The position numbers and the translations under genes are program-made. A stretch of 64,000 nt of DNA, taken from positions 21,886,001 through 21,950,000 of the forward strand of contig NC_043014.1 of NCBI RefSeq assembly GCF_006345805.1, in the 5' to 3' direction. Numbering within the stretch: the stretch's first letter is position 1; every line of letters begins with the position of its first letter. The stretch comes from Octopus sinensis (Eukaryota). Positions 1,640 through 54,240 of this stretch are shown here, piece by piece. Below the pieces are notes generated by a model that saw nothing but the letters and a program-made list of their open reading frames with translations, had not been told where the DNA came from and ran no database searches.

Positions 1640-3346
1640 ACATTTATCTGGTGGTCAATGAGGAAACTAGGGATAGATGAATGGTTATTGAGAGCTGTGC
1701 GAGCCATGTACAGAGACGCTGCAAGTAAGGTGAGGGTTAGCAACGAGTACAGTGAAGAATTCCGGGTAGAGGTTGGGGTCCACCAAGGTTCAGTCCTCAG
1801 TCCCCTCCTATTTATCATAGTCCTCCAGGCAATAACGGAGGAATTCAAGACAGGATGCCCCTGGGAGCTCCTCTATGCTAATGACCTTGCTCTAATTGCT
1901 GAGTCACTATCAGAACTGGAGGAGAAGTTTCAGGTGTGGAAGCAAGGATTAGAATTGAAGGGCCTTAAAATCAACCTAGCCAAAACCAAAGTCCTAATAA
2001 GTAGGAAGGTAGACCAATCACAAACGCCTTCAGGTAGATGGCCCTGCTCAATCTGTAGAAAAGGTGTAGGTAGAAACTCTATAAGGTGCACCAAGTGTAA
2101 GCTATGGACACATAAGAGGTGCAGCAATGTCAAAGGAAGGCTAACTAGGAAAATAGTTTTTGTCTGTGGCAGATGCTCAGGAGCAATAAACACTGAAAAT
2201 GTGCAGAGACCAACTTCTACCATGTTCCAGGGAGAAAAACTAGAAGTAGGTGATAGCTTCCGCTACCTAGGTGACCAAGTCAGTAGTGGGGGTGGGGTAC
2301 TGCTAGAGTAAGAATAGCCTGGGCAAAGTTCAGAGAGCTCTTACCTCTGCTGGTGACAAAAGGCCTCTCGCTCAGAGTAAAAGGCAGACTGTATGATGCA
2401 TGTGTACGAATAGCCATGCTACATGGTAGTGAAACATGGGCTGTGACTGCTGAGGACATGCGTAAGCTCACAAGAAATGAAGCCAGTATGCTCCGATGGA
2501 TGTGTAATGTCAGTGTTCATAATCGACAGAGTGTAAGTACCTTGGGAGAAAAGTTGGACCTAAGAAGCATCAGTTGTGGTGTGCAAGAGAGACGTTTGCG
2601 CTGGTATGGTCATGTCACGAGAATGGCTGAAGATAGTTGTGTGCAAAAGTGCCATACCCTAGCGGTTGAGAGAACCTGCGGAAGCGGTAGACCCAGGAAA
2701 ACCTGGGACGAGTTGGTGAAGCATGACCTTCGAACTTTAGGTCTCACCAAGGAAATGACTAGAGACCGAGACCTATGGAAGTATGCTGTGCGTGAGAAGA
2801 CCCGGCAAGACTAGTGAGACCATAACCCATGGCCTCTACCTGGTATGTAGCCAGTCGACTTATACATACCTTTCCTTCTTGGGACACAAAACTCCACTTG
2901 TGAAGACCCATTGAGGCAAGTGAAATCAAAATCAAAATCAAGATCAAACCAAATCAAATCAGATATCAGAAAGCAGAACCAAAATCAAAGTTGATCAACA
3001 TCAATGGAAATTGCAGCTGTGATACCAGTGCCGGTGACAAGTAAGCGAACCATCCGATCGTGGCCGTTGCCAGCGCCGCCCCGATTGGCCTCCATGCCAG
3101 TGGCATGTAAAAAGCACCATCTGTCCGTGGCCGTTTGCCAGCTCCGTCTGGCACCTGTGCGGGTGGCATGTAAAAAGCACCCACTACACTCACGGAGTGG
3201 TTGGCGTTACGAAGGGCATCCAGCCGTAGAAACACTGCCAGATCAGACTGGGCCTGATGCAGCCTTCTGGCTTCACAGACCCCAGTTGAACCATCCAACC
3301 CATGCTAGCATGGAAAGCGGACGCTAAATGATGATGATGATGATGA
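1640..3346 (+). mobile_element. 5'-truncated RTE-clade LINE: RT C-terminal half with an embedded PHD-like zinc finger, 3'UTR and (GAT)n tail; inactive
   Basis: ORF 1658-2311 has GVHQGSVLSPLLF and a YADD motif mutated to YAND. Frameshift near 2290, then ORF 2353-2814 with the RTE C-terminus (LYDACVRIAMLHGSETW...RRLRWYGHV...GRPRKTW). Ends in (GAT)n at 3329-3346. Confidence 0.9.
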
Positions 3347-10149: not shown

Positions 10150-12088
<1,939 letters not shown>

Positions 12089-15000
12089 TGAAATTTAATG
12101 CTTGTAATTAAACGCATAAACTATCAGAATACTCTACAATAGATTTATTTATGATTGTTTGTATTTTACATAATATTCCCTATAAGATGTAAGAATCGTC
12201 CATTTCTCTGTATGTGTGTGTATATATATAATATATATATATATGTGTGTGTCTTCATGCCTATAGTTTTTCACAGTTCAAATGCAAGATAACTCATCTT
12301 CCGGTCTCATCCCTCCATCAATTATTTTCTGCCTGAGACATGTCTAGCTAAAACCATAATTATTGTAATATTTCTTCTGTCAGTGGTCCACCATCGACGA
12401 TGGAGGTAAATATATGTAATGTGTGTAATTGCTTTTTACAGATGTTCGTTAATCTCAGCTATTTTACCATGTCTTTATCTAGGCTGGAATTCACTCCATT
12501 TAAAATACGCACACACAGACATAAATCTCAGCTATCCGTGTACGTATGTGTGTGGGTGGTTAATGTCATGTTTGTTGATGAATTCTGATTTGAGAACTTT
12601 ATCCTATACTCCATCCAGTCTTAAACATGCACATGTTAGTAATATAATTTTTTGGCTCACCGATTTAAATATACATTCCTCACTTTGGCAATTCATAAGT
12701 GTGGAAATGAGATTGTGTAGACGTGCAATGTCTTTCTCAAGGGCATTAGTAACTGACAGTAAATCGGGTAAATTGTTAAACAACGACGAAACTGGTCAGT
12801 TCGATCCCCGTTTTAAATTGTTGCAAAGATCCTCGTGGTCCTAATTTCACTGCTAGATTTAAATGCATTGTACACACGTGTGTATGTGTGTGTGGTATGT
12901 AAACCGCATCCCTCTTCTTCCCTTCCCAATTCATGTCGACTTCAAACCAGCCATGATTGAACATCAAAAGCCATGTGGTGTGTTCAGTTGAAAATAATTT
13001 AAGCATAGGTTAAAAAATATACATACTTGTGTGTGTGTGTGTATATATATATATAGCACACGTATACCACTACTTTTTATCTATGAACTCACTGAACCCA
13101 TTCACAATTAGTAAGCTTCATACTACGTCTCTTAGTGTCTCTTCCGCCCAGACACCACCAGCCATAAATCACCTGAGCCATGTGCCATTCTTTATATAAA
13201 ATTTGTATTGTGATGTCTTTTGTATTCAGTTTTAAGTTAAAATAATGAACCTCGAAACGAGCTTCTGATACAATAGACATTCAAAAAGAACATTTAAACG
13301 ATGCTTTGAGTTAAAATTAGATAGATTTACGTTATAACAAAGAATTATCTAGACTAGACATGATGAGAATACATATTTTTAGTTAACGCTTTCTCCATGT
13401 TCTTAAATTTTAGAGATATCTAAGAACAGGATAACGCAAAATTTATATTCACTAGGATAGTCTTGTTATATTGTAAATTTTATTCAATACAGCATTTGTG
13501 TTCATTGAGTATTTAAGTTTAGACATTAATTCACCGTAAACTACTATGAGTTTCCCCGTTTCAATATATTTTTAATTCGGTTTTAGTCATGTGTGTATGA
13601 TGAATTCTTTGTAAATTTCTATGTCAGCTTACATACACCAAATAAATATCAATGTTTTGTGACTATTCATAGCAATTGAAATCATGATTTTACGTTATCG
13701 TTTTAAGTGTGGAAAGGGTAATCCGACGCTCAAATGTCCATATTGTTGATCTATGTAGCATGGAGATTTAGGAATCATCATCTAAAGATTTTGTACTGGC
13801 ATATAGTTGTGATACCCGTTTTTAACACTTTTGGAAGTTAGAGCGGATTAGGTTTATTCGGGATCGATTTAATATTTCATTGTTCCAGGGATAAAGTAAA
13901 TTACGAGTCAAGTAATAGATGTTTGGAAATCTGTATCTTTGTATACTATAGTAGAATCTCCACTTGTTTAGAAAGGGCACTGGTGATAGAGCGGGAAACA
14001 AAATGCCATACATTTCGTTGTATTTCTCTATTTTCTTATTTCGAATCCCGCCAAAATCAGGACTGTACCTCCTATGCTCTGATTGTCAAATACTGATGTC
14101 GGTATAACCGACAATAGCTGTCTTCCATAAATGCTCGATTTTGTACTGTCTTGTTAGAAATCGATATGAATGAAAATATAATCCTGCAACATTTGTACAA
14201 AATTTAATATGCCTTCTAAAATATTTTCATCGATGTCTCCCCATGTCTCACTTCCTCCACCCTCTTGAGTGTGCACAAAAACTACTCAAACTGAAAATAG
14301 TTACGTAGTCTGTTTATTGGGAAGCTGAAATTTCAAATGTTCGATTCTCACCTTCGGACGTGTATGTATGTACACACACACACACATATACACGTACACG
14401 AGGAAGTGATGGGGAGATAGTTGTCTGTCTGTATGTTATATACACACACGCGCACAACATTCATATTCACTTTTTTTACAGCTTGAGAAAAGCATTTTCA
14501 TTCAATAAAATATGCGAATAATTAACTTGGATATATTTAGAACCAAAGAATTTTTAGTCTTGACAGGGTTATTTAGGCGCAAATTTCTCTGCGGACATCT
14601 CACAACAGAAGCAACCTTAGGTAACGGAAGGAAACCAATTTCTTTGGACAAACCGCTAAAAATTCAAGACTTATAAAAGAGTTTATTGGTTATAGTCTAC
14701 CAGCTATTCTAACTATTCTCTCACATTAATCATCTCCATATTGGCAATGTGAAACCACCACGTGACCTGACATATTAATTGTCTCTCTTGAATCACCTGC
14801 TTCTTTCTCCTTCCTCCTACCATTTTCTACACCTTTATTGTTCTTACTTTCTCCCCCTCCAATCAAATTATTATCTCCCACCTTGAATCTTGCTACTCCA
14901 ATCATATTCTTTACTGTCACCACATCCACTCACTGTACTCAATTTCGTCTTCCTCTTAACAAAAGCCATCATCACTAGAAGAACCAGCTTCCATATGGTG

Positions 15001-18000
15001 ATGAATTGGTCTTAATGATCTGATTTCATCTAATTTAAAATCACTTCCAAGTTTCAGCTTTGATTTTATTCAGTGCAGCCCCATTCGTAATAATTCCAGT
15101 GATATTGATCAAGATGTAGCAAATTTTCTGTAAATTCAGCTTGCGATGCGGTTTCAATCCTTCTGTATGCCTAACGACACTTCAGATGCCCACCACCTCT
15201 CTTCTATAGTATTTTGACTTCAGTTTTTATTCTTGCAGAAGAGAAAAGTTCTCAAATCCCATGGCTGTTTTTAAAAGTAACAACTGCTGTAATTGTTTAT
15301 GATTTAATGCGACCGATAACAAGCATGAACATCAAAACATCTTATTTCTCCATGTGGCTCGTTTTGGTTCTTTATTGAAATGGTTTATAATTTTTTTTTT
15401 ATTGTAGTATAGAGAAGCTACGTTAATTTTCCTTTGTTTAACAATTTTCTCATATCTAATAAACCCCTTTTTTTAGTATTGCTTCTCATCGAAACTCTTC
15501 TTGCCCGCATTTTCCCTATAGACACGTTAATTACATCAAGGTCACAAGCTAACGTGAGCGCCTCTTTGGTCGGTTGCTCGATTTACTGGTAGTAGTTTCG
15601 CATCTCATCTCATGGGTTTTTGTTTCACATTCGGCTATTTCTCTTTGTTATATTCCCGCTCCACCAGTTTCCTTCGCTTTATGCGCAGCCACATAGCTCC
15701 CGCAGTCGCTCGACCTGTTAGAAATAGCTGCAGATCCCCTCAATGCTAAAGATGAAGTCTATACCTTTTTTATATACACTTTTTCAGTTCCACGTTTAAT
15801 AATTTTGGAGGGAAAGTCCCCAGAATGAAAGAACACCTGAGTGTTAAACATAGTATAAGGGAAGAATTTACCAGTTCTGACCTTTGGAACGAGATATCTA
15901 ATTTTCGTATGGTATTGTACAAATATATTGAAATCCTGAAGCAAATACTGGCGAGTGTCGGATTGTCTGCAATACTTCTTAGTGTCGTCGTATTTTAATG
16001 TGCCCTTGTAAAAGTTAAGGCATGAAAAGTGTTAACTCAATAAAATGTATTTTCTGTATATGTACGCTGTCTCAAAAAGTATTATGTTTAAATTTTTTTT
16101 ACAAAAGTGGGCACTGTTAAATGTAATGGAAATTACGGATCGAATATATATTGAAATGATTACAATTTTACAGGAAATTTGATTTGCAAAATAAATAAAT
16201 AAAATAAATTTAGCTCTACGTCTGTTGAGGCATATACGAGAATAAACTATTGCCTGTCCTACATTGCTATCATAATTTTGGGGCTAATGCAGTTTATACA
16301 GATGGAACTTAAAATTTCGGTTTTTTTTACCTTGTCCTTGTTTTACTTTCGTTTCACTCGAAACTTGAATGAAGTACGGGACTACTATATCCTTCCTTTG
16401 ATAGGGGTATATATATGGATGTGGTAGGGAGAATTTATTACCATCGTCGTTTTGTTGGATCCTCCCAAAGTTTATAAGAAATATGGTCTAGCCGTATGTG
16501 GTATGATGTTAGAATTACAGTTCTGTTAGCTACTTTTGTGATTGGCCCAAATAACAAGCCACCTGATCTGCTCCATTTTTTTATTATCAATGTTAGAATG
16601 GGTAGTAAGGCGGTGAGCTGCTGGCAGAATTGTTAGTACGCCGGGCAAAATACTTGGCTCTCGGGGTCGATGAATTCGCCTTAATCTCTCCACCGAAATT
16701 GCTGGCCTTGTGCCAAAATTTGAAGCCAATATTAGAATGGTTAGTGTACGACAGAGTGCCAGCTAAAATACATAGCGGTATTTATGTCTCGCATATGGTT
16801 CTAGGCTCAATTCCTAGACGTCGACGGTGTCGTTCATCCTTTAGTCAACACAATACTAGTCATGTATTGGATTGATTTGATCAACTGTACTCTACCCACA
16901 AATTTGGAACTATCTGCTAGAAATAATTATTTAACGGCAATTAATAGGTCAGTGATAGACGAAAAATATCTTACGGTATTTTGTTCTCGGTATCCTGAGT
17001 TCAGGTCTTGTTTAAATTAAGTTGTCATTCAGTACAATTTATGCACTACGACTATCTTTCTATCGTAAATTTGTTAACAGTAAAGTTATCATTCACGTTG
17101 GACTATTCCTGATTATGAAATTAAAAACGAGAGACTTCAACCATCTCGACCCGTCTTACATATGGTAAGATTCCAAATGTTGGTTGAGTTCCTGCAGTTC
17201 TTGGTTGTTTTCAGGAAGGTATATGAGGAAACACTACGAGAGGCTAATAAAATCTTCGTTGATTATGCGATGTTGCTGCTAAGCTTGGACTTTTAAAGAA
17301 AAGCGTTTCTTGCTGTTGTCACTGTTTTGGTGACAAGATTTTAACCGGGGGCTTTGTATCAACTTTATTCTATCACTTGTGTTATTTATGGTAACTTGAG
17401 AGAAGTGATGGTCGTGTCGGGTATATGGTCAATTTAAGCACTTCCCTTTTAAAGTATCAAAAATTTACTTTGGAGGATCGAAGTTTGTCAGTCTAACCCG
17501 TTATTGCTTGATTATCATCTCCCACGCTCCACTGCAGTTGGATATCGCCTTATCGGAAAGGAGTTGTGGCACCTTTTTGTAGGTGCAGTGTAGTAGAATA
17601 GGTGAAATAGTGAAGCAAAAGATCGAATCTGGAGCATAGGCTTCTTTCGCTGGAAACTTTTTCATAGCTGCCATCTCTGTAACAGTGGCATAAAAAGCAT
17701 AAATGAGGGTTACTTGAGTATGTGGTGGCAATGTATGGTATTGGTGCAGGGATCAAAATATCCCGTTCGTAATTATAACAGATCTTATCGTTTATCTCCC
17801 TTCGCAACAGTTTCTGTGGCCAATGAGTGTTGACCTGCTAGAAATATTAACTGATTTCTCTCATCTTGACATTTTAAGATGGAGACAACATGTTGGTTCT
17901 GGATAGTGATTCAAAATTATAACTTTATAAGACACTTGTAAGTCTGTTTGATCAGAAGCTAAAGTTACATCTGAGAAATGTTAAATGTATATTTTGATAT

Positions 18001-19609
18001 ACCTATCTACAAGGTTTGGTTGGTTTTCCTATCTCACCAATCAGAATCACCAATGGTTGTGATGAGACAGTCCACTAACCAGAGGCCGGAGACAAATAAT
18101 ATTAGGGTTTTTGCTTTAAATATATTACAGGTTCCATTTGTTTTACTTACTCGCTTTTATTTAACAAGGTCCACTTTTATCGGATTCTTTCAACTTCACA
18201 CTCACTTCTCATATGGTGAGTACCAATCAGCACTCAAGTTGTAAGTCTAAAATCATTCCTGAAGCAACACAACTAATACCATACTTTTTTTTTTGTACAT
18301 ACTGGACTACATTCAATGTTCATGCAAGTCCTGTCAGAGTGGTTTATACATGTACTGTCATGTTAGTGAGGAGACAATGTACAGATAGGTCATGTCAGTG
18401 TGGTAGTAGTCATGACAATTGTATTCTAGATGTTGTATTTCAGACAACATAGTCTACTACCTTTAAGAAGTAGGGTGTAGTTTGTGAAATATTTTGATAT
18501 GGTCAGTAAAATGAACAACTATGTACTGTGTTCCCTGTTAGCTTAAGCTTTAGTTATCAACGAATTATTTTAAGCCTCTCTCTTTTCTTTAAACAAATAT
18601 AATAATAGTAAAGTAGACAGTTGATGCTGTGTGGTTTAAATGTTTGCTTTGCAATCATAAGGTTTTGGGATTTAATACAGCTTGTCCAAGTGTCTTCTGT
18701 AACTCTAGCCCAGTCAAAGCCTTGTGAATGGATTTTGTTGGCAGAAACTGAGAGAACCCTGTCATATGTTTGTCTCCATTCTAGACATGGGCTAATTCTA
18801 AATAAATGTTACTGTTATACATGCAGTGTCCATTTGTTTGCAATTTTCAGTGAAAACACCCAGCCACTGTGCTATCCGTGTTTGAAGGACTAGAGAAAAT
18901 ATTAACTTGTTAGAAAACCTGAGTTAGTAATAGAAAGAGCATCTAGTAATAGGAAATCTACCTTATTGAACTTTGCCTGACCCATTACAAACATGGAAAA
19001 GTTTATCAAAGCAATGGTTCAGTCAACCATGATGTTCAACTCTTTTTGATTCCAATCCTTAAGGCCGTTCTGTTTTTATGATAATGTTTTTCTCTCGTTT
19101 CAATCACATAATGAGAATGTTATTCAAAACACCCAAAATCACGTTTGTCTTTAAAAAGAATACATTGAACAATACAATCCTAGATATCCAAAATTGCAGG
19201 ATGATCATAATTGACTTGGGGGTGGGGGTTTAACAAACAATTGTTATAGAGCTATCTGAAACAATTGATTTTTTTTATGAACAAGAGTATTTCAGTTAAA
19301 GATCTAATGTATTCTTTTTTAAGGTACTAAGATGGATGTGATCTGAATGAAGTCGAGTGACCATGTAGAGGTTCTCTCATTGACTCTAAAACTGGTTGCG
19401 AGGTAGACTAGGAGATGGTCAGGTTTCAAGGTTAGTGTATTGAATCCTGATCTAAGTCTTAAAACTCTGCTTAATCCAGTTTGCTTTACTGTTATAAAAC
19501 CAAGCTGCTTCTCTACTTAAAATTGAGTAGTTAATTGTAACAAGGAAATCATCCGTATACAATATATACAAGCATAGGAAAATGTCTACAAAATGTAAAT
19601 AGCAGTGCT

Positions 19610-19990
19610 ATATGGCTGTGACTATAGAGGACATGGAAAAGCTTGAGAAAGAAATAAAGCCAATATGTTCTACTGGATTGGTAATGTCAGTGTGCATGTA
19701 CAGCAGTGTAAATGGTTTAGAGAAAAAACGGCTATAAGAAAATGCAAGAGAGAAGGCTGTACTGGTATTGTCATGTGATGCGTATGGATGAAGACTGCTG
19801 CATAAGGAAATACCAATCTCTAATCGTAGAGAGGACCTGTGGAAGGGGTAGACCCAGGAAGACCAAAGTGGTGAGAAATGATTGCTAGATGCTGAGCCTC
19901 ACAGAGGAGATAAAGGGACTATAACATCGGGCAATTTGCTCTATGTCAAGCTGAGTAAAATAATGGTCACACATATAGGCATGTCCTCTA
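19610..19990 (+). mobile_element. Decayed RTE LINE 3' coding fragment in hnRNP intron 1
   Basis: Similar to 2500-2770 (gtaatgtcagtgt...gcaagagagaagg...acctgtggaaggggtagacccaggaagacc). Confidence 0.65.
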
Positions 19991-20793
19991 TGACCATGCC
20001 CACCCCCAAATCTGTCAAAGCACCCCTACAACCCATCTTCCCAACATCACTGTTCATCTCACTATCTATGGTCACCCATTGTAGGCCCCTCCACTCCTCC
20101 TCATGTGCCTCTACACTCCATACTGTAACATGTCTATCATACCAATCCATTTTCTCTCACCATCACTCACTGGTTATGGCTTCCCTGTCTTGAAACATCT
20201 CCCCCCTCACACTAATGGAACATCCCTCTCTATCTTCTTTATTACATATGCTCCCCCAACTGTTCACTGTAGATATGCCTCCAGGACATCTCCAACACCA
20301 TCTATTTTTCTTTCTCTGACTGTCTCTGTTTAGCTCTTTTTCCACTTCCTAAGACCACTATCTCTGTCCTGCTATTATACACTAACTGCTTATTTCCCTC
20401 TCAGTTCAGAGGTCTTTGTCTTAGCAACCCTGCTGGTGCCATGTAAAAAAAGCACCCAGTACACTGTGAAGTGGTTGGTGTTAGGAAGGGCATCTAGTTG
20501 TAGAAACCATACCAAAACAATTGGAGCCTGGTGTAGCTCTTTGGCTTGTCAGCTCCTGTTAAATCATCCAACCATTGATGATGCAATAACAGTAATTATT
20601 ACCATAGGGGTGGAGCATAACTAATTATTAGGGCATTGGATAACATACTTTGTAATATTTAGTTGTAGCCATTTTTGTTAGACCTTGCATAGGTTAACAT
20701 TTTCCATTTTGTGTTTGAAATTACTATTTTTATTGTATAATCTTAGGCAAAAATTGAATTTACATGTAATTGACTGTTGTTTTTCTTTTGTAG

Positions 20794-21588
20794 GTTGATG
20801 AAGCCCAGAAACATCGACCACACTGCATTGACAGTAAAGAGGTGGAGACAAAACGTGCCATGCCACGCAATGAGGTTGAGTCACAACCGACAGTTAAGAA
20901 GCTATTTGTGGGTGGCATCAAGGAAGAAATGACAGAAGAGGACCTACGAGAGCTGTTTGGTCCCTTTGGTGAGGTGAAGACGGTCGATATGGTCATTGAT
21001 AAGAACACGCAAAAGAAAAAGGGTTTCTGCTTTGTGACGTTTGAAGATTACGACACAGTAGACAAACTGGTATTGACCAAGTTCTTTGAGTCAAAGGGTA
21101 AAAAAATTGAAGTGAAGAAAGCTCTGTCCCGTGAGGAAATGAACAAGGTCCGTAGTGGAGGCGGATCTGGTATGGGTATGGGACCTGGAGGAGCAATGGG
21201 TTATGGAATGGGAGGTGGGGACTTACCAATGCGTGGTGGCGGTGGTGGTGGCATTCGTGGAGGTCGTGGCGGCATGCCACTTGGTCGTGGACGCATGAAC
21301 AACTGGGGACCCCAGGGAGGTTTCTGTGACGACGGTTATGGTGGCAGTGACGGTTATGGTGGCGGTGGCGGGTGGAATCAGGGCGGAGGTGGGCAGTTTA
21401 GTGGTAACGGTTATGGTGGAGGTTGGGGCAGTGGTGGAGGGGGTGGTGGAAACTTTGGCTCAAACTATGGCAGTGACTACGGAGGTGGGCCAATGAAACG
21501 GGGCGGCTACTCCCAGCGAGGTGCAGGTCCCTACGGCAACTTCAGCGGTGGCGGAGGAAACAGTGGTGGTGGTGGCTATAGACGTTGA
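20794..21588 (+). CDS. hnRNPA/B: hnRNP A/B family protein, coding exon 2 (end of RRM1, RRM2, Gly-rich domain, M9/PY-NLS-like motif)
   Basis: Acceptor ttttcttttgtAG ending at 20793, in frame with exon 1 (EQ|VDEAQ). RNP2 LFVGGI, RNP1 KGFCFVTF, RGG/YGG repeats and GPMKRGGYSQRGAGPY resembling hnRNP A1 M9. TGA at 21586-21588. Total about 332 aa. Confidence 0.95.
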   Translation, partial: VDEAQKHRPHCIDSKEVETKRAMPRNEVESQPTVKKLFVGGIKEEMTEEDLRELFGPFGEVKTVDMVIDKNTQKKKGFCFVTFEDYDTVDKLVLTKFFESKGKKIEVKKALSREEMNKVRSGGGSGMGMGPGGAMGYGMGGGDLPMRGGGGGGIRGGRGGMPLGRGRMNNWGPQGGFCDDGYGGSDGYGGGGGWNQGGGGQFSGNGYGGGWGSGGGGGGNFGSNYGSDYGGGPMKRGGYSQRGAGPYGNFSGGGGNSGGGGYRR

Positions 21589-21594
21589 GTGAGT
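21589..21594 (+). promoter_or_regulatory. Consensus 5' splice site immediately after the stop codon (3'UTR intron)
   Basis: CGT TGA|GTGAGT. Confidence 0.65.
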
Positions 21595-24500
21595 ATCTCT
21601 GCATCAGGCTTATCTCTCAAACCCTACTACTACTACTACAAGATGCTACACAGTATAAGGCCAGCATGGCAATCTTCTACAGTAAATCTACTTCTACTAT
21701 TACTACTATTACGATAAAAATGATTTCAGTACTACTACTACAAGATGCTACAGTAATAAGGCCAGCATGGCAAGTACCACAGTAAAATATCACAATTATT
21801 ACCATAAATATATGCATATGTGTATGTATGTATATATGTGCGTGTGTGTATGTATGTATATATATACACACATACATACACACACAATACAGTAATGCTG
21901 CTATTATTTCCCAACTGAATGAAAGAAGACATTCTAGATACAGATATAAGGTAGTCAGCCCATTATCATTGACTTTCCTACACCCCAAATAAGTGGCATT
22001 ATATACAACTTCGCTGCTAGCATACTTACTATAATCTTAAATTTTATGCCATCTCTCCATCTATACTTCTACATCTCACACACACATATATATATGTATG
22101 TATATATGCTGTAATACTACTATATTTTGTGTCTTAATTTTTATCTACTCTATGAAGAAACTACGGAACAATTTACGTAAGGACTCTAAGGCAGCTGGAT
22201 GTTATAAAAAACTACAAACCTTTTCACTAATACAACTGAACATCTTTTGAGAATTCCTTTAAGACTTTCATTGACTTCAAAAGAAAAGGAGGAATATATT
22301 GTTGTATGTATATGTACATACATACATTCATTTAAAAAAAAAAAATCTATATCTTATAACAGTAAGAAACGAAAATGGAAAATAGAAATCAGGAAAGAAG
22401 AGAGGTAGAGAGAAGAAGAAAAGACAAGTTCTTTAGCATCTTTTAAGAAATAAGGATTTAAAATGAGAAACGAGATACATTGCAACAACACCTCTCTACA
22501 TCAGTCTATGTATATTGTATATCTATATTATATATATATATTTATATATATATATAGAACTCTATAAAATTTAAGTGGGAAGAGAAACTTTTGTATGTAG
22601 GTGGAGAGATAAAGTTACACACTTAAAAAAAAAACCTGTCAGACATATTTCCAACATAAACTGTATTTAATTCTAAATCTACTTCATTTAACTCCTTTAT
22701 TTAGGTAAGGACACATCTGTTATTAATATCATTAATATTATAATTATTATCATCATCATTGTTTGACACAATGTCAAATGGAGGACATGCTGGAGTTGTT
22801 TCTCCTCAGTTTGCACTCGTCAGTAAGCGTTATGTCCTTAAACAAAGACAGTCAACTTAACTCGTTTAAGGCATCATGCCAAATTAAGAAATCATAAAAA
22901 TTATTATTTCTTAAAGTAATTATGCCCTCATAAAAAAATTCTATTATTTATTATGACTACTACTATTACAATTATTATTACTATCCTAATAGTACATTTT
23001 GTTTCTTTCCATAATTCATGAAATATCTACTAGTAAGTTCTGAATTTCCATTGTATATTTTTACTTTCTTTTATCCTCTCTAGTTTTCCATCATCAGTGA
23101 ATAAAAAGTATTTGTTTGAAACCTTAAGTAGTTCTAAGTTACTCAGTATTGTTTGTTGATGTTTTACCCCCAACTTCATCTCTATGCCACACCCTTTTCC
23201 TCTTTCTACAGAATACCCAGATAAATAGCAAGTGGTTGAATGATAGAGCATTTCTTTGCTTGTGTGTACAAGACACAGGATTTGAATCTATTGTAGCTAT
23301 GGAAGATATTTATCTGCATGCATGTGTGTATCTAGACTGGGCAAATGTAATTATGTTTTTGTATGGGATAGTTCTGGTGGATAGATGTAGAGGTGTTTGT
23401 GTGTGACCTGGATGGATGTACTGGGATGTGTGTGAGTGGATTTGTTCAGGGCAGGTATGTGTGTGATATATGTATACTTGTGAGTGTAATTTAAAATATT
23501 TAAAAAAAAGTAGCTGGATGTCAGTAAAGGCTTTACTAAGCTGACTTTGTAGACAAGAAGTCTAACATGATATCTCAATTGTTTGTCATGGTGGATATGT
23601 ATCATTGCTGCCTTCTGATTGCCCAAGTGTGTGAAAGTGGTGTAAGCTGCTTTCTTAGTACTCTCTTAAGGGCTTTACTATTAAAATAGCCGTCAACCAA
23701 TAGATGCGAGTAAAATGGCTCCGGCTAATGAGTGTTTCAAGTTCATGACATTAAGTAGATGAATGCTAATATTGCTTTTGGACAAGGCAACAATCTGCTG
23801 CAGATGACCTATCAATTTTATTACTGAAACGTTTTATGCAAGGATGCAATGAAGGGCTGCTGTGAGTTTGATCTTCAAACCTGAACTGCTCAAGGAATTA
23901 TTACATTATTTATAAAGGATGGAGGATTAATTTTTATTATTAATTTTAAACTATAACTTTCAGTTGTTAGTTGGCCTATGGTCAATGGGTTTTTTTGTTG
24001 GCTGAGGCTTTAATGAATATTGTGTCTGTTTTCTGTACCACAAGTCTTTATATTTAAGGTTACCTGAGGTAAACCTTTGTTAGTGTGATAGCACAGACTT
24101 CCCTTCTTTTCCATGCTACTTCCAGCTAAGCTACATACATACATACATACATACATACATACATACACACACATATGCACAACCTGTCTGTACTGTATAG
24201 TTATACTTGTTGTTTATATAAATATTTTATATATAAATGTGTGTGTTTTTATTTCACTACCATTTTCATTTTTCTAGTGCCATTGCAGAGATTGCCAGTA
24301 TAGAATCAGGCAAGTGTGTTCACTCCTTCTTGGAGCTGCTTTTATAAACTTTCTCTTACATGCACCATCTTCCATATCACAGTTTTCTACTTCAGATTTT
24401 CTTTCTTTCTCCCCACAATTTTGCATCACTCAATCTCTCTGAGTTTCTCTATCAATATAAATGATAAAAAATAGCCTTTTCAAATTGCTTTCCATTTCCT

Positions 24501-25087
24501 CTTTCTCTCTTGACGTAAGCTATCGTCTTCCAGTTGTGATTGAAGTTAAGATACTATAACACCAAAGCTCAATCCAAATCATATGCTTTAGAAAGTCAAC
24601 TGCATAGTTATCCCCCTTAGTTGTAACATAACTTCACTATCTGATGGCAAAATCAGAATGTAAGGAAGAAAATGATTTTCTGTTGTAAAGTATAAATTCC
24701 ACATCCTATTAACTATGATATCATTAGTATCTTGCTCATTTTGAAGCCAACCAGCCATTTATAGCGTACTAAAACAAGTCTAGACAGTTTAGTTGCAATG
24801 AATAATTAGTAGTTTGCTATTCCAAAAGTAAGTTCTAACATCAGGGCCAAATTGATGTATGATGAGATATTTACAAATGTAAATCTTTTTTAATCATGTT
24901 TACCTGAGAATCCCTATCTTTCCTAGAAATATGATTATATTTCAGTCAGGAGTCTTAGTAACTTGGTAGTGTGATGCCTGTACGAGAAATGTATATGGTG
25001 TGAGAATGAAATTTATGTTATTTAACTTTTAAATGCTGCATAACTTTTGGTTCAAAATTATTGAAAATAATTTTAACTTACTCTTAA

Positions 25088-25288
25088 CCTTCTGGCATTC
25101 AGATAATTTTGTCATGCAATGCTTATTTATTCACATTTTGTATTAATCATGTATTATCTAAAAGATTTTGATGATGTGGTTATTTATTTTTAGAATAACA
25201 TTGTAGGATGAGGCTAGATCTGGTCAGTTTGAACATAAAAACAGGTAGAATATTGGGGCCAGATATGGTCAGTTTAAATGCTAAAGGG
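25088..25288. mobile_element. Degenerate TTAA-type (piggyBac-like) MITE
   Basis: TTAA-ccttctggcattc ... aaatgctaaaggg-TTGA; imperfect TIRs. Confidence 0.45.
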
Positions 25289-42912: not shown

Positions 42913-44303
42913 AATACAATTTATTTTGCAAATCTGGTCCTTCATCTGGTACAGCTTATTATAGAGATATTTTCAGCCATTCAATTTGGGGGAGAACTTA
43001 GTTATGAAGTATTTTTCCATAATCCTCCTGAAGGAGGTGTCATTCTTTGGACATTTGTAGAAGGGAAAGATCTTAAATTTTCTTTCTCCACATGTATCTA
43101 GGTGTTTACTCAGTGGTATCTTGCGCAGTTCTTCCCGTCGGACATGTTGTCGGTGAATCCTGGCTCGTTGGCATAAAGAATTTCCAGTTTCACCTATGTA
43201 ATCCTCCTTGCACGTGGGGCAAGTTATGCAGTATATTACATTCTGCGTCTTGCAGTTCATATCTGCATTTATTTTGAATATGTGACCACTTTTAAATTTC
43301 ATTTCTTTGTCTCCCTCTATGTATTTGTAGGAGGGGGCTACTGCAGATCCCACATCTACCATCTCCGCACTCTTTTACAAAGAATTCAGTTTTAGTTTCT
43401 GATGAGAATTTCGCTCTTGTTAGTTGTTTCTTCAGGTTTTTGTCTTGTCGTCTACTGTTTTTTATGCAATATTTGTTTAGTATGTCTTCCATTTTGGGGC
43501 TTTGTAAGACTATTGGTAGGTTTGAATGTATGATTTGAAACATGTTGGTAACTCCAGGGTTGTGTGTGTTTATGAAAGGGATAATGTTTTCTTTGTTTTT
43601 TCTTTTGGATGTCCTGAGTTGTGTGATGTCTAGTTTCATTGCTCTTGAGATTCCATTTTTTATTAGTTTAAGGGGGTAGTTTTTGTTCTAGTAGGAAGTT
43701 TTTAAGTTCATGTAGTCTTATCAGGCGTGTTTGTGAGTCAGTTACTATGCTGCATATGCGTCTTGCCATACTATATGGGATGTTTCTTTTTAAGTGGGAT
43801 GGGTGGCAGGAGTAGAAATTTAAATATTGGTGTGTGTCGGTATTTTTGTTGTGGATGTCTGTTGTGATGATGGAGTTGTGTATCTTGATGTTGATGTCTA
43901 GGAAGGGAAGTTCGTTGTGGCTGGTATCTATTGTGAAGTTGATAGATGGGTGCAGTGTGTTGAGGATGTTGTGGAATGTTCGTATGTCTTCTGATCTGTT
44001 CCAAAAGATGAAGCAGTCATCGAGGTAGCGTTTCCACTTTTTCTTGATGTCTTCTCTGAAGTCGTGTTCTTTTTCTCCAACACTACTTTCAGATACAAAA
44101 ACACACACACGCACACACGCGCGCACACATACATACACATGCTCTCTCTCTCACTTTCTCCCCATTCATCACACTCTTGTACTATCTTATATCCCTCCCC
44201 ACCACTACACACTCAATAATACTATAAAATGATCAAAAACTTTTTCCACAGGAACTTAGTTCAATTTGAAAAATCCACCAGAATGGACGCAATTTGAAAA
44301 ATC
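41640..44303 (-). mobile_element. 5'-truncated Penelope-like retroelement (RT C-terminus plus GIY-YIG endonuclease) with an inverted terminal repeat
   Basis: Minus-strand ORFs: 43668-44060 (RYLDD...LPFLD...CHPSH), 43292-43639 linker, 42973-43362 GIY-YIG (VIYCITCPTC...YIGETG...R..H...E..FI...LN); frameshifted. 41807-42015 is inverted at 44067-44289. Outer boundaries are approximate. Confidence 0.85.
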
Positions 44304-44325
44304 TAAATATATACATATATATGTA

Positions 44326-47300
44326 ATAATGGAAGTCTGTTGGGGTTCGCCAATGACGTCAGTAATGCCAGAGGTGGGAGCGTAACCCAAAGGCAGACGC
44401 GGCCATAAGTTGGGCCCGTAGCAGCAGTAGGGTTGGGGATCCTCTCTTTTCGGGCTTGTCGTTTCTGGTCCAGGCTCTTGAGACGCTTTTCCTCAAACAG
44501 CCTAACACCCTTTTGGACAGCTGGACGCCAGGCGCCGCGGTCAGAGGCAATCGATTCCCAGCCACTGGCTGAAATGCCGCAGGCCTCAAGGGAAGTATTC
44601 AGGCTGTCCTTGTATCGCCTCAGTGGCTTTCCATGGTTTCTTGCTCCAGAAGCCAGCTTAGAGAAGATCATCTTTGGTAGACGTGCATCATCCATTTGGA
44701 CTACATGTTCGACCCACCCGAGCTGGGCCTTTATGATGAGGGCTTCGATCTCGAGCATTTCGGCTCTGCGAAGCACCTCAGTGTTGGAGGCTCTGTCCTC
44801 CCAGGAAATTCCCATGATTCGTCGCAAGTAACAGAAGTGGAACTGGTCAAGCACTCGCATTTGCCTCTCCTACAGCATCCACGTCCCACAGCCGTAGAGC
44901 AGAGAGGTGATGACGACTGACCTATAGACTGTCAGCTTGGTGGAAAGTCTGATGCCTCATTCGGCCCACACACGTGTCCAAAGTCTGCCAAACGAAGCTC
45001 CTGCTTTTGCAAGCATCATAGAGACATCTTTGTCCATGTTTGAGGACAGGCAGCTTCCCAGGTATGTAAAGCTCTCCACGTTGTTCAGAGTTGTACCCTC
45101 AATCTCAATCTGAGGCTCAGGAGGTGTCAGGCTAGGTGCAGGCTGAAGCATCACTTCAGTTTTTCGCAGGTTAATGGTCAATCCGAAGGCTTTTGCTGCT
45201 TCTGCGAGACAAGTGGCAAGTTCCTGCAGGTCTGGTTCATTCAATGCTGTAAGCGCACAATCGTCTGCAAACTGGAAGTTTCTCACTAGGGCGTCCAGGA
45301 CTTTGGGCTTTTGTCTTCAGACGTCTGAAGTCAAAGAATCGGCCGTCACATTTGTTGCGAATAGTGACACCAGCATCAGACTTTGACAGGGCGCGGAAGA
45401 GCATGGTGGCAAAGATGAGGATGAGTGTGGGAGCCATCACGCAGCCTTGCTTCACGCCATTGGAGACCGGGAATGGATCAGAGATATCTCCGTTTTCCAC
45501 GATGCGAGCCATCATGCAATCACGAAATGACTGGATGATCCATGCAATCATGAAATGACAAGATATCCCACAGGCCCTTTCGGGGGATATCATGTCAAAA
45601 ACCTTCGTCAGGTCCATGAAGAGGATGTAGAGGTTCTGGTTTTGTTCTTGGCACTTCTCTTTTATCTGCCGTACTGCAAAGACCATGTCTATTATCCCCT
45701 GTTGTTCCTAAATCCACACTGGCTCTCTGAGACCACGTCATCAAGCAAGTGGTGTGTGATGCGGTTCAGAAAAACACGGGCCATGATCTTTCCACCTCTG
45801 TGGTTGTCACATGAAGCTCTGTCCCCCTTGTTCTTATACAGATGCACGATGTTGGCATCCTTGAAGTCCTGCGGCACTGACCCTTCATCCCAGAACTGCT
45901 GTATCAGCTCAGTCAACTTGATGGCAACAACTTCACCTCCCTCTTTGAAGATCTTTGGGGGTATTCCGTCAGGACTAGGTGCTTTCTCCACATGTAGTTG
46001 CTTGATGGCCTTCTGGATTTCTGCCAATGTTGGGTCATCAAGCGACACCAGGGCTGGGCGCTGTGGAATGTCTTGGATGGCCTGCTGGTCAATCTGGGAA
46101 GGTCTGTTTAGCAGCTGACTGAAGTGTTCACTCCAGTGCTGTTTGATGTCGCTCTTCTCAGTAAAGGTTCCATCGGCAGAGCGCACATGTGCCATTGCAT
46201 TTAGCGTGGGGCCATACACGTCTTTCAGGCCGGCAAAGAACTTCTTGGAATTGTGCTCGTCTGCATACTGCTGTAGTTCTGCAGCCTTGTTTTCCCACCA
46301 CTTGTCTTTCATCTGTCGCAGCTCAGTCTGCACCTTTCCTCTGATGTTCTTGAGGCGGTCGTGCTTGACTTGGGAGTCTTTGTCATTGAGCCAGGCTGTG
46401 AAGGCTTCTTTCTTCTCCTGGAGGAGGGTGGTGATCTCCTTGTTGTTGTCAAACCAATCTTGTTGTTTCCGTTTTGTGTGGCTTAGAGTAAGGCTGGCAC
46501 AGTCATACATTGCATCCCGGAAGTTGGCCCAGGCCTTCTCAAGGTTTCCCTCTGCTGGCAGATGTTCAAGCTGGTTCGCAAGGTTGTCAACGAGGGTCTC
46601 TTTTGTTTTTGGTTCATTGAGTTTCTGGACGTCTAGTTTCTTTTTAACATCAGCTTTCTGGCGTCTATGTCTGCTGACGATGGAAAAGGACAGTCTGCAC
46701 CTCAACAGCAGGTGATCTGTCCATCAGTCAGCTCCCCTCATTGCCCTAGTGATGGGAACATCCTGGATGTCACGGTGCCTGGTGATCACATAGTCAATCA
46801 GGTGCCAATGCTTGGACCTTGGGTGCATCCAGGTAGCCTTGTGGATGTCAGGCAGTTGGTACAGGGTACTGGTGGTGGTGAGTCTCTGTTCAGCGCAGAA
46901 GGTGAGTATCAGTTGACCGTTGGTATTCTCATGTCCGATGCCATGTGGACCGATGGTATCAGGCCAAGACTGGGCATCTTTGCCTACACGCATTGAAGTC
47001 CCCGAGTATCAGCTGCTTGTCGTCTTTAGGAAATGGCCGTAGCACTTTGGTGAGGTTCTGATTGAACAGCTCTCTCTGCTCCAGAGTGTAAGCACTGATG
47101 AGTGTCAGGTGCATCTTGCCTTGGAGAGGAATTCTCATCACCATCAGGCGGTCGCTGATTCCTCTTGGGAGTGACTCCAGGTTCGAATGATAAAGCCAAC
47201 TCCTGCTTCCCTGCGTTCATCCGGTGCCTCCCCTAACCAAAAGAAAGCGTATCCAGCTCTAGCCTCGGTGATCTCCCCCGTGGCGGCAAGGCGTGTCTCG

Positions 47301-51989: not shown

Positions 51990-52970
51990 ACGTGTTAGGG
52001 GTGGGTGCGTGGCAGTAGGTGTGAGGGTGGATAAGAAACGTGATGCTGTTTTTGTTATTGTTGGTCAGGGTAGTGATGGTGGTACATACGATAAGAGTTA
52101 ATGTTATTCGTGGTGATGCTGGCAGTGATGATGTTGATGACTTTGTTGTTGTCGGGATTGTTGGTGTTGAGAGTAATTTTGTTGTTATTGGTGCTGATGG
52201 CTGCAATGGAGTTTGTGTTGTTATTGTTGGTGGTGTCCATGGTTGTAGTGGTGATAGTGGTGTTGATGATGATAATGGTGGTGTTGGTGGTGGTGATGGA
52301 GATGATGGTGGTGGTGATTATAGTTTTGTTGTTGTTGTTGGTGGTGGTGTTTGTGTTGGCAGTGATGATAACGACCACGATGTGGATGACATCACTGTGG
52401 CCCGCCTCCTCGTGATCAGTCCCTCCTTGTTTCACCGTTGCAATTAACATTGACACCGTCACCAGCACCAGCGCCATCACAACTGCTACTAACAACAACA
52501 ACAATAATAGCAACTAAGTCCACCACCACCACCACTACCACTACCACAAACAACACAGCACCTCTACCAACCCACCTCCAAGCCATCACCACCAACAACA
52601 ATAATCACGACGACAACTACGTCACCACCACCACCACCACCACCACCACCACCACCACCACCACCAACACCAATACCAGTAGCAGCAGCAGCAACAACAA
52701 CAATAACAACAACAACAAAACCACGTGCCAACTATGTAGTCACAATGTTGTCACTTGTTCTGCCAGAAAAAGCAGCCAAATCTAATCTCACATCGCCCCA
52801 CTGCTAAAATAAGGGGAAAATAAACATGCATTGATTGAATAATGTAGACCTTGATACATAGTCTGAAAAATAAAAGACGAGAAGGTCACGGCTGGAACGC
52901 CTTCAATCAAGGTTGAGTGGCGCTAAACAAACAAGAGCAGTACCATCACCACCACCACCACCACCACCAA

Positions 52971-53013
<43 letters not shown>

Positions 53014-53392
53014 GCCAAAACCAACATAACTACCACTACAACTACTACTATTACCACAACCACCACTGCTATCATCACCACTACCACCTTCACCCCAGCG
53101 CACCTACTATTTCCACGTCACTCCTCTCACCGCTCCCTCTCCCACAATATAACACCACCCTACCTCCCAATACTACTAAAATAGCACTATTGCAACACTA
53201 CATCGCAATCACCACAACCACTACAAACACACCACCACCATACTCATCATTACAACACCCCAGCTTGTACACCGCCACCATCATTGGAGTCACGCCTAAA
53301 TTTTAGATAACAGTACCATTTAGTGTCAACAACAGTAGTAGTAGTAGTATCAGTAGCAGAGGAGTAGTAGTAGTTGCAGCCGCAGCAGCAAC

Positions 53393-53451
<59 letters not shown>

Positions 53452-54240
53452 CAGCAGCAGCAGAAATAGTAGCAGTGGTAGTAATTGCTGCTGCTGCTGA
53501 GAGCAACAGCAGAAGTAACAGTAGCGCCACCGTCCGTAAACAATGGAAAACAGTCAACAGATCGATAAGACGAGTAATGGCTGGCAGTGATCTCAGCTGA
53601 ATGGAATTTGTTACTGAATGAACTGAATCCGTCGTCGCCGCCGCCGCCGCTGCCACCACCACCACCACTAACAACAACAACGGCAACAAAATCATCGTCA
53701 CCACTACCACTATCACCACCGTCACCGTCACCGTCAACGCCACCACAACCACCACCACCAACGACGACAACAACTTTACTAAACACTGCCAACAGCGCCA
53801 GCACCAACATTGCACATGCATCACTAATGAATCACCACCAAAACTGCACCAGCATGTTTGTTGCAGCACCACTAAAACTGCACAACCAGCAACACTGCAT
53901 TACTGTCATTGAACTTTCTGCACTGCTTTACCTACCAACAGTACTGTACCACCACCACCACCACCTTCACCCTCAGCACCACCAGCACCGTCAGCAGCAG
54001 CAGCACCAGCACCAGCACCACCACCGCCACCACACTATCACCACCAGCACCACCACCAAATACCACTAGCACCACCAGCACCGCCAGCTGCAGCAGCACC
54101 ACCACCACCAGCACCACCACCGCTACCACTAGCACCACCACCACTACTACCACCAGTATCAGCACCACCACCGCCACCACCAGTACTACTAATCCCAGCA
54201 CCACTACAGTACCACCACTACAAACATCATCACGCCATTT
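51990..54240. repeat. Compound trinucleotide low-complexity tract (GGT/GTT, ACC/AAC, ACT/AGT blocks of alternating polarity)
   Basis: Direct reading; source of the many poly-T/V/Y/H ORFs in the ORF track. Confidence 0.9.

What the first reader, a model, noticed from the sequence alone, without database searches (positions are those of the whole stretch)
21586..22830. Candidate recursive-splice/NMD autoregulatory switch in the hnRNP 3'UTR
Seen: the stop TGA is followed directly by a perfect donor, GTGAGT (21589). At 22681-22710 a pyrimidine tract and acceptor (ctcctttatttAG) abut a strong donor (GTAAGG, 22705), and a second donor CA|GTAAGC lies at 22823. Known: AG|GT ratchet points with a downstream donor define RS-exons, and human HNRNPA2B1 and HNRNPA1 autoregulate through 3'UTR splicing. 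Inferred: recursive use leaves the junction at the stop (NMD-immune), while inclusion of 22705-22822 (118 nt) puts a junction beyond the 50-55-nt rule (NMD-sensitive). EJC-dependent NMD is not established in cephalopods.
Basis: partly seen in the sequence, partly recalled or inferred. Interest (0 to 1): 0.78.

Follow-up and report, generated by a model that had tools for sequence, protein, structure and literature searches.

The report
Conserved splice-donor motif abutting hnRNP stop
An octopus hnRNP A-type gene has a consensus splice-donor motif right after its stop codon that is conserved across octopus and cuttlefish/squid-type relatives, but the proposed recursive-splice/NMD switch further downstream looks like chance motifs inside a long, unspliced 3'UTR.

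Summary
The window is Octopus sinensis chromosome CM016876.1. The gene is a two-coding-exon hnRNP A homologue (XP_029647336.1). All three motifs are at the stated coordinates. Only the first is more than chance. TGA|GTGAGT plus the next 25 nt is 30/31 identical between octopus and decapodiform orthologues, while synonymous sites are 47% identical.

The ratchet (AG|GTAAGG, 22704/22705) and second donor (22823) are identical in three Octopus species. However, they sit in about 3.5 kb of uniformly 92-100% conserved sequence with no exon/intron step. The decapodiform 3'UTRs contain no ratchet motif. Motifs of this quality occur at chance density.

Seven decapodiform RNA contigs from separate sequencing runs have coding intron 1 removed yet read straight through TGA|GTGAGT. 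Six of them run at least 2.6 kb into a 3'UTR colinear with the genome. So the donor is not constitutive there. Two other contigs end exactly at ...TGA, which hints at a minor isoform spliced there.

Best reading: a long continuous 3'UTR that opens with a conserved, mostly unused 5' splice-site/U1-binding element. This resembles the stop-proximal 3'UTR introns of vertebrate HNRNPA1 and HNRNPA2B1. Recursive splicing is unsupported. No octopus RNA could be retrieved.

The parts
11843..12046 (+). Coding exon 1 of the hnRNP A homologue (ATG to ...AEQ|GTAAGA)
   Evidence: The spliced product equals P0001/P0122 (XP_029647336.1) at 100%.
20794..21588 (+). Coding exon 2: end of RRM1, RRM2 and the Gly-rich tail, ...GGYRR, stop TGA at 21586-21588
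   Evidence: Pfam finds two RRM_1 stretches.
21568..21619 (+). Deeply conserved block spanning the stop. It comprises the last 21 nt of the CDS, GTGAGT (21589-21594) and 25 more nt: GTGAGTATCTCTGCATCAGGCTTATCTCTCA. It is a consensus 5' splice-site / U1-binding motif abutting the stop.
   Evidence: Exact in O. vulgaris and O. bimaculoides. 30/31 identical after the stop in two decapodiforms. Two decapodiform RNA contigs end exactly at ...CGTTGA.
21636..21672 (+). Second and third conserved 3'UTR blocks (CTACAAGATGC ... CATGGCAA). Octopus carries a second copy at 21738-21773.
21589..25180 (+). Inferred long continuous 3'UTR; the 3' end is not determined
   Evidence: 92-100% identity between O. 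sinensis and O. bimaculoides per 100 nt, against 74-91% in introns and flanks, apart from microsatellite dips. The decapodiform orthologue has an unspliced 3'UTR of at least 2.6 kb. Inferred for octopus, not shown.
22692..22710 (+). Ratchet-like motif ctcctttatttAG|GTAAGG; judged a chance motif inside the 3'UTR
   Evidence: Present. No specific conservation. No AGGTRAG in the decapodiform 3'UTRs. Chance density.
22823..22828 (+). GTAAGC donor-like motif; weak and at chance level

Best explanation
Positions 21589-22830 are the start of a long, continuous and strongly conserved 3'UTR of an Octopus sinensis hnRNP A-family gene. They are not an intron/RS-exon/intron array.

The one feature under selection is the block that spans the stop codon: a consensus 5' splice site (TGA|GTGAGT) followed by a fixed 25-nt pyrimidine-rich stretch. 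I propose that it works as a regulated, mostly unused donor or U1 snRNP docking site. In most transcripts the downstream sequence stays in the mRNA. In a minority the donor is spliced to a distal 3'UTR acceptor, leaving a junction at the stop.

The balance between the two forms would tune the gene's output. The retained form carries an intact 5'SS motif and a multi-kb 3'UTR, so it may be poorly exported or unstable. This parallels the regulated retention of the stop-proximal last intron of human HNRNPA1 and the stop-proximal UTR intron of HNRNPA2B1.

Shown: the motif, its conservation, and read-through transcripts in orthologues. Inferred: use of the donor, its partner acceptor, the regulatory consequence, and that octopus behaves like the decapodiforms.

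The AG|GTAAGG at 22704/22705 and the GTAAGC at 22823 are chance motifs.
For: - The gene model equals the annotated protein. The window is identical to the O. sinensis locus L004.
- TGA|GTGAGT plus its context is exact in three Octopus species.
- It is 30/31 identical in two decapodiforms, against 0.47 identity at synonymous third positions.
- Alignable homology ends about 150 nt after the stop.
- Decapodiform RNA contigs L006-L011 from six runs encode the full spliced protein and continue 2.6 kb past the stop. They are colinear with same-species genomic contigs L014-L017 and with genomic L013 of a second species. A seventh contig, L002, reads 836 nt past the stop.
- The sequence after the stop is as conserved as the CDS over about 3.5 kb between O. 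sinensis and O. bimaculoides, with no step at 22705 or 22822.
- Contigs L012 and L003, from two further runs, end exactly at ...CGTTGA. That is where a de Bruijn graph would branch if some reads continue differently after the stop.
- No paralogue in hand shares the last 10 codons.
- Literature: PMC3091714 and PMC8068773 place the stop in the penultimate exon, describe the stop-proximal NMD-immune intron, and report HNRNPA1 autoregulation through intron 10 splicing. PMC4380460 and PMC9074902 show that an intact 5'SS motif in a terminal exon blocks export.
Against: - No spliced junction was seen in any species.
- The contig-end argument is indirect.
- No octopus RNA contig could be retrieved, so the octopus 3'UTR structure is extrapolated from conservation and from orthologues about 270 My apart (the divergence time is from my own knowledge).
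- The exon side of the donor (TGA) is non-consensus, and by a rough PWM the site is only moderate.
- The intronless paralogue P0024 has no GT after its stop, so the arrangement is not universal in the family.
- Conservation of the block could serve another purpose.
Confidence: 0.55

Rival explanations
1. The sequence from 21589 to a distal acceptor is a 3'UTR intron removed recursively through the ratchet at 22704/22705. Optional inclusion of a 118-nt RS-exon (22705-22822) makes the mRNA NMD-sensitive and gives autoregulation.
For: All motifs are present and exact in three Octopus species. The 22705 donor is strong by a rough PWM. Human HNRNPA2B1 uses an optional extra 3'UTR exon to trigger NMD (PMC3091714).
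Against: - Flanks are equally conserved, so the motifs are not specifically preserved.
- The decapodiform 3'UTRs have no AGGTRAG and no other GTRAGT for 2.5 kb.
- Orthologous mRNAs are unspliced here.
- The 22823 donor is weak, at about 7 per kb.
- Ratchet points are described as abundant within long introns in Drosophila (PMC8605326). The ratchet here lies only 1.1 kb from the donor, and the putative intron would be a few kb at most.
- EJC-dependent NMD is untested in cephalopods.
Confidence: 0.04
2. In Octopus, unlike the decapodiforms, TGA|GTGAGT is a constitutive donor of an ordinary 3'UTR intron. It would be spliced to one of several strong downstream acceptors (for example 23084, 23212, 24126, 24278 or 28551). 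The junction sits at the stop and is NMD-neutral.
For: The donor is consensus on its intron side and is conserved. There are many pyrimidine-rich acceptors downstream. Vertebrate family members have such an intron (PMC3091714, PMC8068773).
Against: The supposed intron is as conserved as the CDS for about 3.5 kb, which is unusual for an intron. The orthologous sequence is retained in the mRNAs of decapodiforms, including the blocks shared with octopus.
Confidence: 0.13
3. The conserved block is a cis-element unrelated to splicing. It could be an RBP or miRNA site, a termination context, or a stop-codon recoding/readthrough signal (the frame stays open 42 codons after TGA). The GTGAGT would then be coincidental.
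For: The mRNAs retain the element. There are pyrimidine-rich repeats (TATCTCT twice). The ORF is open after TGA in both lineages.
Against: - Substitutions between octopus and decapodiforms show no codon periodicity.
- A 1-nt indel breaks the frame after ...PWQ.
- The open frame is explained by a (CTA)n microsatellite, which has no stops in any frame.
- The 'W' at the stop in P0129 reflects an automatic gene call that read TGA as sense, because the DNA is TGA.
- A six-of-six match to GTRAGT placed exactly at the stop has a prior of about 5e-4.
- Predicted structures are not better than shuffles (z -0.2 to -1.1) and show no covariation.
Confidence: 0.2

Closest known systems
Human HNRNPA2B1 3'UTR alternative splicing coupled to NMD (McGlincy et al. 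2010, PMC3091714)
   Same: Same protein family. [quoted passage not shown] The idea that extra 3'UTR splicing sets protein level is shared.
   Different: In human, the UTR exons and junctions are documented by RACE and qPCR and respond to UPF1 knockdown and to A2 overexpression. Here no 3'UTR junction was seen, and orthologous mRNAs are unspliced for at least 2.6 kb.
Human HNRNPA1 autoregulation by inhibition of intron 10 splicing (Suzuki and Matsuoka 2017, as cited in PMC8068773 and PMC9634572)
   Same: The stop is in the penultimate exon. The regulated step is retention versus removal of the intron that follows the coding exon. A retained form is what the cephalopod contigs show.
   Different: In the decapodiform assemblies in hand, the retained form appears to be the main RNA. 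The spliced form is only hinted at by contig ends. Protein dependence is untested.
Recursive splicing ratchet points / RS-exons (PMC8605326, PMC6224609)
   Same: A juxtaposed acceptor and donor (YnAG|GTAAG) with a further donor downstream.
   Different: Ratchet points are described as abundant within long Drosophila introns (PMC8605326). That known ratchet points are conserved as motifs and show lariat or sawtooth signatures is from my own knowledge. Here there is no evidence of an enclosing intron, no specific conservation, absence in decapodiforms, and chance-level density.
Intact 5' splice-site motif in a terminal exon causing nuclear retention and decay (PMC4380460, PMC9074902, PMC11629677); U11 binding to a conserved 3'UTR element in U11/U12-65K (PMC5473595)
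   Same: A consensus 5'SS motif kept in the mature 3'UTR and conserved, with potential to tune export or stability without productive splicing.
   Different: Those systems were shown in human cells. Nothing here tests U1 binding, export or decay.

Membership tests
Recursive splice site / RS-exon | Juxtaposed 3' splice site and 5' splice site (polypyrimidine-AG|GTRAG) | tested here: met
   ctcctttatttAG|GTAAGG at 22692-22710.
Recursive splice site / RS-exon | Lies inside an intron that is actually removed (typically a long one) | tested here: not met
   Orthologous decapodiform mRNAs keep at least 2.6 kb after the stop, colinear with the genome. No octopus RNA was available. The candidate intron would be only a few kb.
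Recursive splice site / RS-exon | Motif conserved above its surroundings or across lineages | tested here: not met
   Flanks are equally 98-100% conserved between Octopus species. No AGGTRAG in the decapodiform 3'UTRs. No alignable homology.
Recursive splice site / RS-exon | Recursive intermediates (lariats, sawtooth coverage, junction reads) | not testable with these tools
   No read-level data are reachable.
hnRNP A/B 3'UTR AS-NMD autoregulation (HNRNPA2B1 type) | Protein is an hnRNP A-family member (two RRMs, Gly-rich tail, ...RR[F/Y] C-terminus) | tested here: met
hnRNP A/B 3'UTR AS-NMD autoregulation (HNRNPA2B1 type) | A used splice donor within 50 nt downstream of the stop | tested here: inconclusive
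   The motif is present and deeply conserved. Use is only hinted at by two contigs ending at TGA. Seven contigs read through.
hnRNP A/B 3'UTR AS-NMD autoregulation (HNRNPA2B1 type) | A further alternative 3'UTR junction more than 50-55 nt after the stop | tested here: not met
   No junction in 2.6 kb of decapodiform 3'UTR. Octopus could not be tested.
hnRNP A/B 3'UTR AS-NMD autoregulation (HNRNPA2B1 type) | Isoform sensitivity to NMD and to the protein's own level | not testable with these tools
   Needs experiments.
HNRNPA1-type regulated retention of the stop-proximal last intron | Both retained and spliced forms exist | tested here: inconclusive
   The retained form is seen in orthologues. 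The spliced form is inferred only from contig ends.
5'SS-motif nuclear retention element | Intact consensus 5'SS motif inside the terminal exon of a processed mRNA | tested here: inconclusive
   The motif is retained in contigs whose coding intron is spliced out. Polyadenylation and localisation are unknown.

The most novel reading that the evidence does not exclude
The stop-abutting 5' splice site and its fixed 25-nt tail would be an ancient autoregulatory device of hnRNP A genes. It would be positionally homologous to the stop-proximal 3'UTR introns of vertebrate HNRNPA1 and HNRNPA2B1. Coleoid cephalopods would keep it as a mostly retained ('detained') 3'UTR intron or U1 docking site that sets the nuclear-versus-cytoplasmic fate of the mRNA. 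That would be a stop-linked splice switch several hundred million years old that works without EJC-dependent NMD.
Probability: 0.3. Interest if true: 0.55.

Novelty: new member of a known kind. Interest (0 to 1): 0.3.

Why it matters
If the stop-abutting donor is functional, the stop-proximal 3'UTR splice architecture used by vertebrate hnRNP A1 and A2/B1 for self-control would extend to molluscs. That would give a simple, testable case of 3'UTR splice-site-based regulation in animals where NMD rules are unknown. As it stands, the specific claim of a recursive-splice/NMD switch is not supported. What remains is a short conserved element of plausible but unproven function in an otherwise ordinary long 3'UTR.

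Tried and rejected

2. Two searches for octopus RNA contigs found nothing usable. One used the Gly-rich C-terminus (a single irrelevant hit). The other used a concatenation of 17 ORF translations from 21.6-24.8 kb (no hit). Octopus transcript structure therefore stays untested.

3. Paralogue and outgroup loci were sought to test whether stop|GT is ancestral. P0098, P0004, P0006 and P0051 were not on record. Only P0024 was retrieved. It is intronless and has TAA followed by TTTGGC.

4. Stop-codon readthrough or A-to-I recoding of TGA was rejected as unsupported. There is no codon periodicity, a frame-breaking indel is present, and the open frame is explained by (CTA)n.

5. A conserved RNA structure around the stop/5'ss was examined. 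A hairpin is predicted, but there is no covariation and z-scores are -0.2 to -1.1.

6. Rfam gave only sub-threshold miRNA-family hits on a (TG/CA)n palindrome.

7. Sensitive alignment of octopus against decapodiform 3'UTRs beyond 150 nt gave only low-complexity matches.

8. No literature on cephalopod NMD or EJC was found, nor on Drosophila Hrb87F/Hrb98DE 3'UTR introns.
Full report
**Locus and gene**

The window is 100% identical to Octopus sinensis CM016876.1 (GCA_006345805.1). Window position 1843 corresponds to position 1 of locus L004. O. vulgaris is 98.9% identical, and O. bimaculoides is colinear.

The gene has two coding exons, 11843-12046 and 20794-21588. Its 332-aa product equals the annotated proteins CAI9737543.1 and XP_029647336.1. 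It carries two RRMs and a Gly-rich tail ending ...GGYRR. The terminal RR, RRF or RRY is shared by most family members retrieved from molluscs, arthropods and vertebrates. There is no other hnRNP gene in the window.

**Checking the observation**

All strings are at the stated coordinates:
- TGA at 21586-21588, followed by GTGAGT at 21589-21594.
- ...ctcctttatttAG|GTAAGG, with the junction between 22704 and 22705.
- tCA|GTAAGC, with GT at 22823.

Chance expectations differ sharply between the three.
- A stop followed by GTRAGT occurs only 3 times on both strands of the window.
- AGGTRAG occurs 13 times per 128 kb, and one copy with a pyrimidine-rich upstream is about what is expected.
- By a rough PWM of my own, the 22705 donor is strong (0.25 sites per kb are as good). 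The stop-abutting donor is moderate (3.8 per kb). The 22823 donor is weak (7 per kb), so about one such site is expected in any 118 nt.
- Acceptors as pyrimidine-rich as the one at 22704 occur 0.55 per kb, and nine lie in the 7.9 kb after the stop.

**Conservation**

Between O. sinensis and O. bimaculoides the CDS of exon 2 is 96-100% identical per 100 nt. The sequence after the stop is 92-100% identical (mostly 97-100%) to about 23980, and 94-100% from 24180 to about 25180. The only dips are at microsatellites. Introns and flanks are 74-91% identical.

There is no step in conservation at 22705 or 22822. The exact preservation of the ratchet and second donor in O. vulgaris and O. bimaculoides therefore says nothing specific about them.

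The orthologue in decapodiforms is cluster P0002/P0126, which includes an Acanthosepion pharaonis entry. It has the same two-exon structure and is 90-96% identical in the RRMs. Its DNA aligns with octopus only for about 150 nt beyond the stop.

Within that stretch the first 31 nt, GTGAGTATCTCT[G/C]CATCAGGCTTATCTCTCA, are 30/31 identical. Third codon positions of conserved codons are only 0.47 identical. The last 21 nt of the CDS are also nearly fixed. Two further short blocks, CTACAAGATGC and CATGGCAA, are shared.

The block spanning the stop is thus under strong purifying selection. The decapodiform 3'UTRs contain no AGGTRAG at all. They have no other GTRAGT for 2.5 kb.

**Transcript evidence**

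Six Logan contigs from six sequencing runs (L006-L011, 3.8-4.4 kb) encode the full 363-aa protein, so coding intron 1 has been removed. They then run straight through TGA|GTGAGT for 2.6 kb. A seventh contig, L002, does the same for 836 nt.

These contigs are colinear, without gaps, with two kinds of genomic sequence. The first is contigs of the same species that still carry the end of intron 1 (L014-L017). The second is an 88-kb genomic contig of a second decapodiform species (L013). Between those two species the first 300 nt after the stop are 95-98% identical, which is more than the CDS.

The dominant assembled mRNA of the orthologue therefore has a long intron-less 3'UTR that begins with the donor motif.

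Against that, two contigs from two other runs (L012, L003) end exactly at ...CGTTGA. In de Bruijn assemblies a shared path ends at the last base before a branch. A-to-I editing would move the break by one or more bases. No paralogue in hand shares the last ten codons. The simplest cause is a second continuation after the stop, that is, a minor isoform spliced at this donor. This is indirect evidence only.

For octopus itself I could not retrieve any RNA contig.

**Interpretation**

The best-supported picture is a long continuous 3'UTR whose first 31 nt form a conserved 5' splice-site/U1-binding element abutting the stop. The element is used rarely or conditionally.

This matches what is known for vertebrate relatives. 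In HNRNPA1 and HNRNPA2 the termination codon is in the penultimate exon (PMC8068773). [quoted passage not shown] HNRNPA1 is reported to reduce its own expression by inhibiting splicing of intron 10 (Suzuki and Matsuoka 2017, cited in PMC8068773 and PMC9634572).

An intact 5'SS motif kept in a terminal exon is also known to block nuclear export and promote decay in human cells (PMC4380460, PMC9074902). The element could therefore act even without productive splicing. Which of these operates here is inference.

Ratchet points are described within long introns (PMC8605326). RS-exons are defined by actual splicing to the preceding exon (PMC6224609). Here the enclosing intron is undemonstrated and would be short. 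The motif is not specifically conserved, it is absent from decapodiforms, and its density is that of chance.

**Alternatives examined**

- Readthrough or recoding of the TGA. The frame stays open 42 codons in octopus and longer in decapodiforms. This is explained by a (CTA)n microsatellite that lacks stops in all frames. The substitutions show no codon periodicity, and a 1-nt indel breaks the frame. The 'W' at the stop in P0129 comes from an automatic gene call that read TGA as sense, because the DNA is TGA.
- Conserved RNA structure. A hairpin pairing UUGAG(stop/5'ss) with CUCAA, enclosed by (GGU)n:(CUA)n, is predicted. It has no covariation, and its energies are no better than shuffles.
- Rfam gives only sub-threshold hits to repeat-derived miRNA families on a (TG/CA)n palindrome.
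- The single paralogue locus I could fetch (P0024, O. bimaculoides) is intronless and has no GT after its stop. The arrangement is therefore not universal in the family. Other paralogue and outgroup look-ups failed, so the ancestry of the stop-adjacent intron position remains untested.

**Verdict**

The motifs are there. The donor abutting the stop is a genuine, deeply conserved element and a reasonable candidate for hnRNP A-type 3'UTR regulation. The ratchet, the 118-nt RS-exon and the NMD logic built on them are not supported by conservation, by orthologous transcripts or by motif statistics.

Interest is modest. The decisive test is a simple tabulation of what RNA-seq reads show after ...CGTTGA in octopus and cuttlefish libraries.

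Noticed in passing
window 21636-21672 and 21738-21773: The two short 3'UTR blocks shared with decapodiforms (CTACAAGATGC...CATGGCAA) are present twice in Octopus, about 102 nt apart. Each copy is preceded by a (CTA)n run. This looks like a lineage-specific tandem duplication of a conserved UTR element.
   Followed up: partly
window 21803-21886 and 24132-24181: A (TG/TA)n-(CA)n palindromic microsatellite and a (TACA)n tract 2.27 kb apart are 76-92% complementary over 25-45 nt. They could pair as long-range dsRNA in the 3'UTR and so be a possible ADAR substrate. They also cause sub-threshold Rfam mir-297/mir-466 hits.
   Followed up: partly
window 21545-21640; L006 1740-1889: The (GGU)n glycine codons just before the stop are complementary, with G-U wobbles, to the (CUA)n run just after the conserved block, in both octopus and decapodiforms. 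Predicted stems enclose the stop/5'ss, but folding energies are not better than shuffles.
   Followed up: yes
window 11843-21588: This hnRNP A gene has only one coding intron (8.7 kb, at ...AEQ|VDEA...). The end of RRM1, RRM2 and the whole Gly-rich tail sit in one exon. In O. bimaculoides an intronless paralogue (P0024) lies about 3.4 Mb away on the same chromosome (L018 versus L005). This suggests intron loss or retrocopy history in the family.
   Followed up: partly
window 1658-2814 (+) and 43668-46705 (-): Retroelement fragments with reverse-transcriptase ORFs (Pfam RVT_1, E 2.6e-13 and 2e-10). The first also has a PHD-like zinc-finger match just below Pfam's cut-off (23.7 versus 24 bits).
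   Followed up: partly
window 52040-54600: A GC-richer low-complexity region with long ORFs on both strands, made of trinucleotide-type repeats (poly-T/S/V/G/Y translations). It is probably a satellite or microsatellite array, not a gene.
   Followed up: no
L013 2869-3828 (protein P0129): An automatic gene call on an ENA genomic contig reads the hnRNP stop TGA as Trp and extends the protein by 60 residues into the 3'UTR. The DNA is TGA, so this is a genetic-code artefact of the caller.
   Followed up: yes
L002 1-21 and L003 1-30: The 5' ends of two decapodiform RNA contigs diverge from the other contigs inside exon 1 (at L006 710 and 750). One divergence point lies at the conserved KLFIGGL codons. 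These are probably chimeric joins through k-mers shared with paralogues, which is a caution when reading contig ends as splice junctions.
   Followed up: partly
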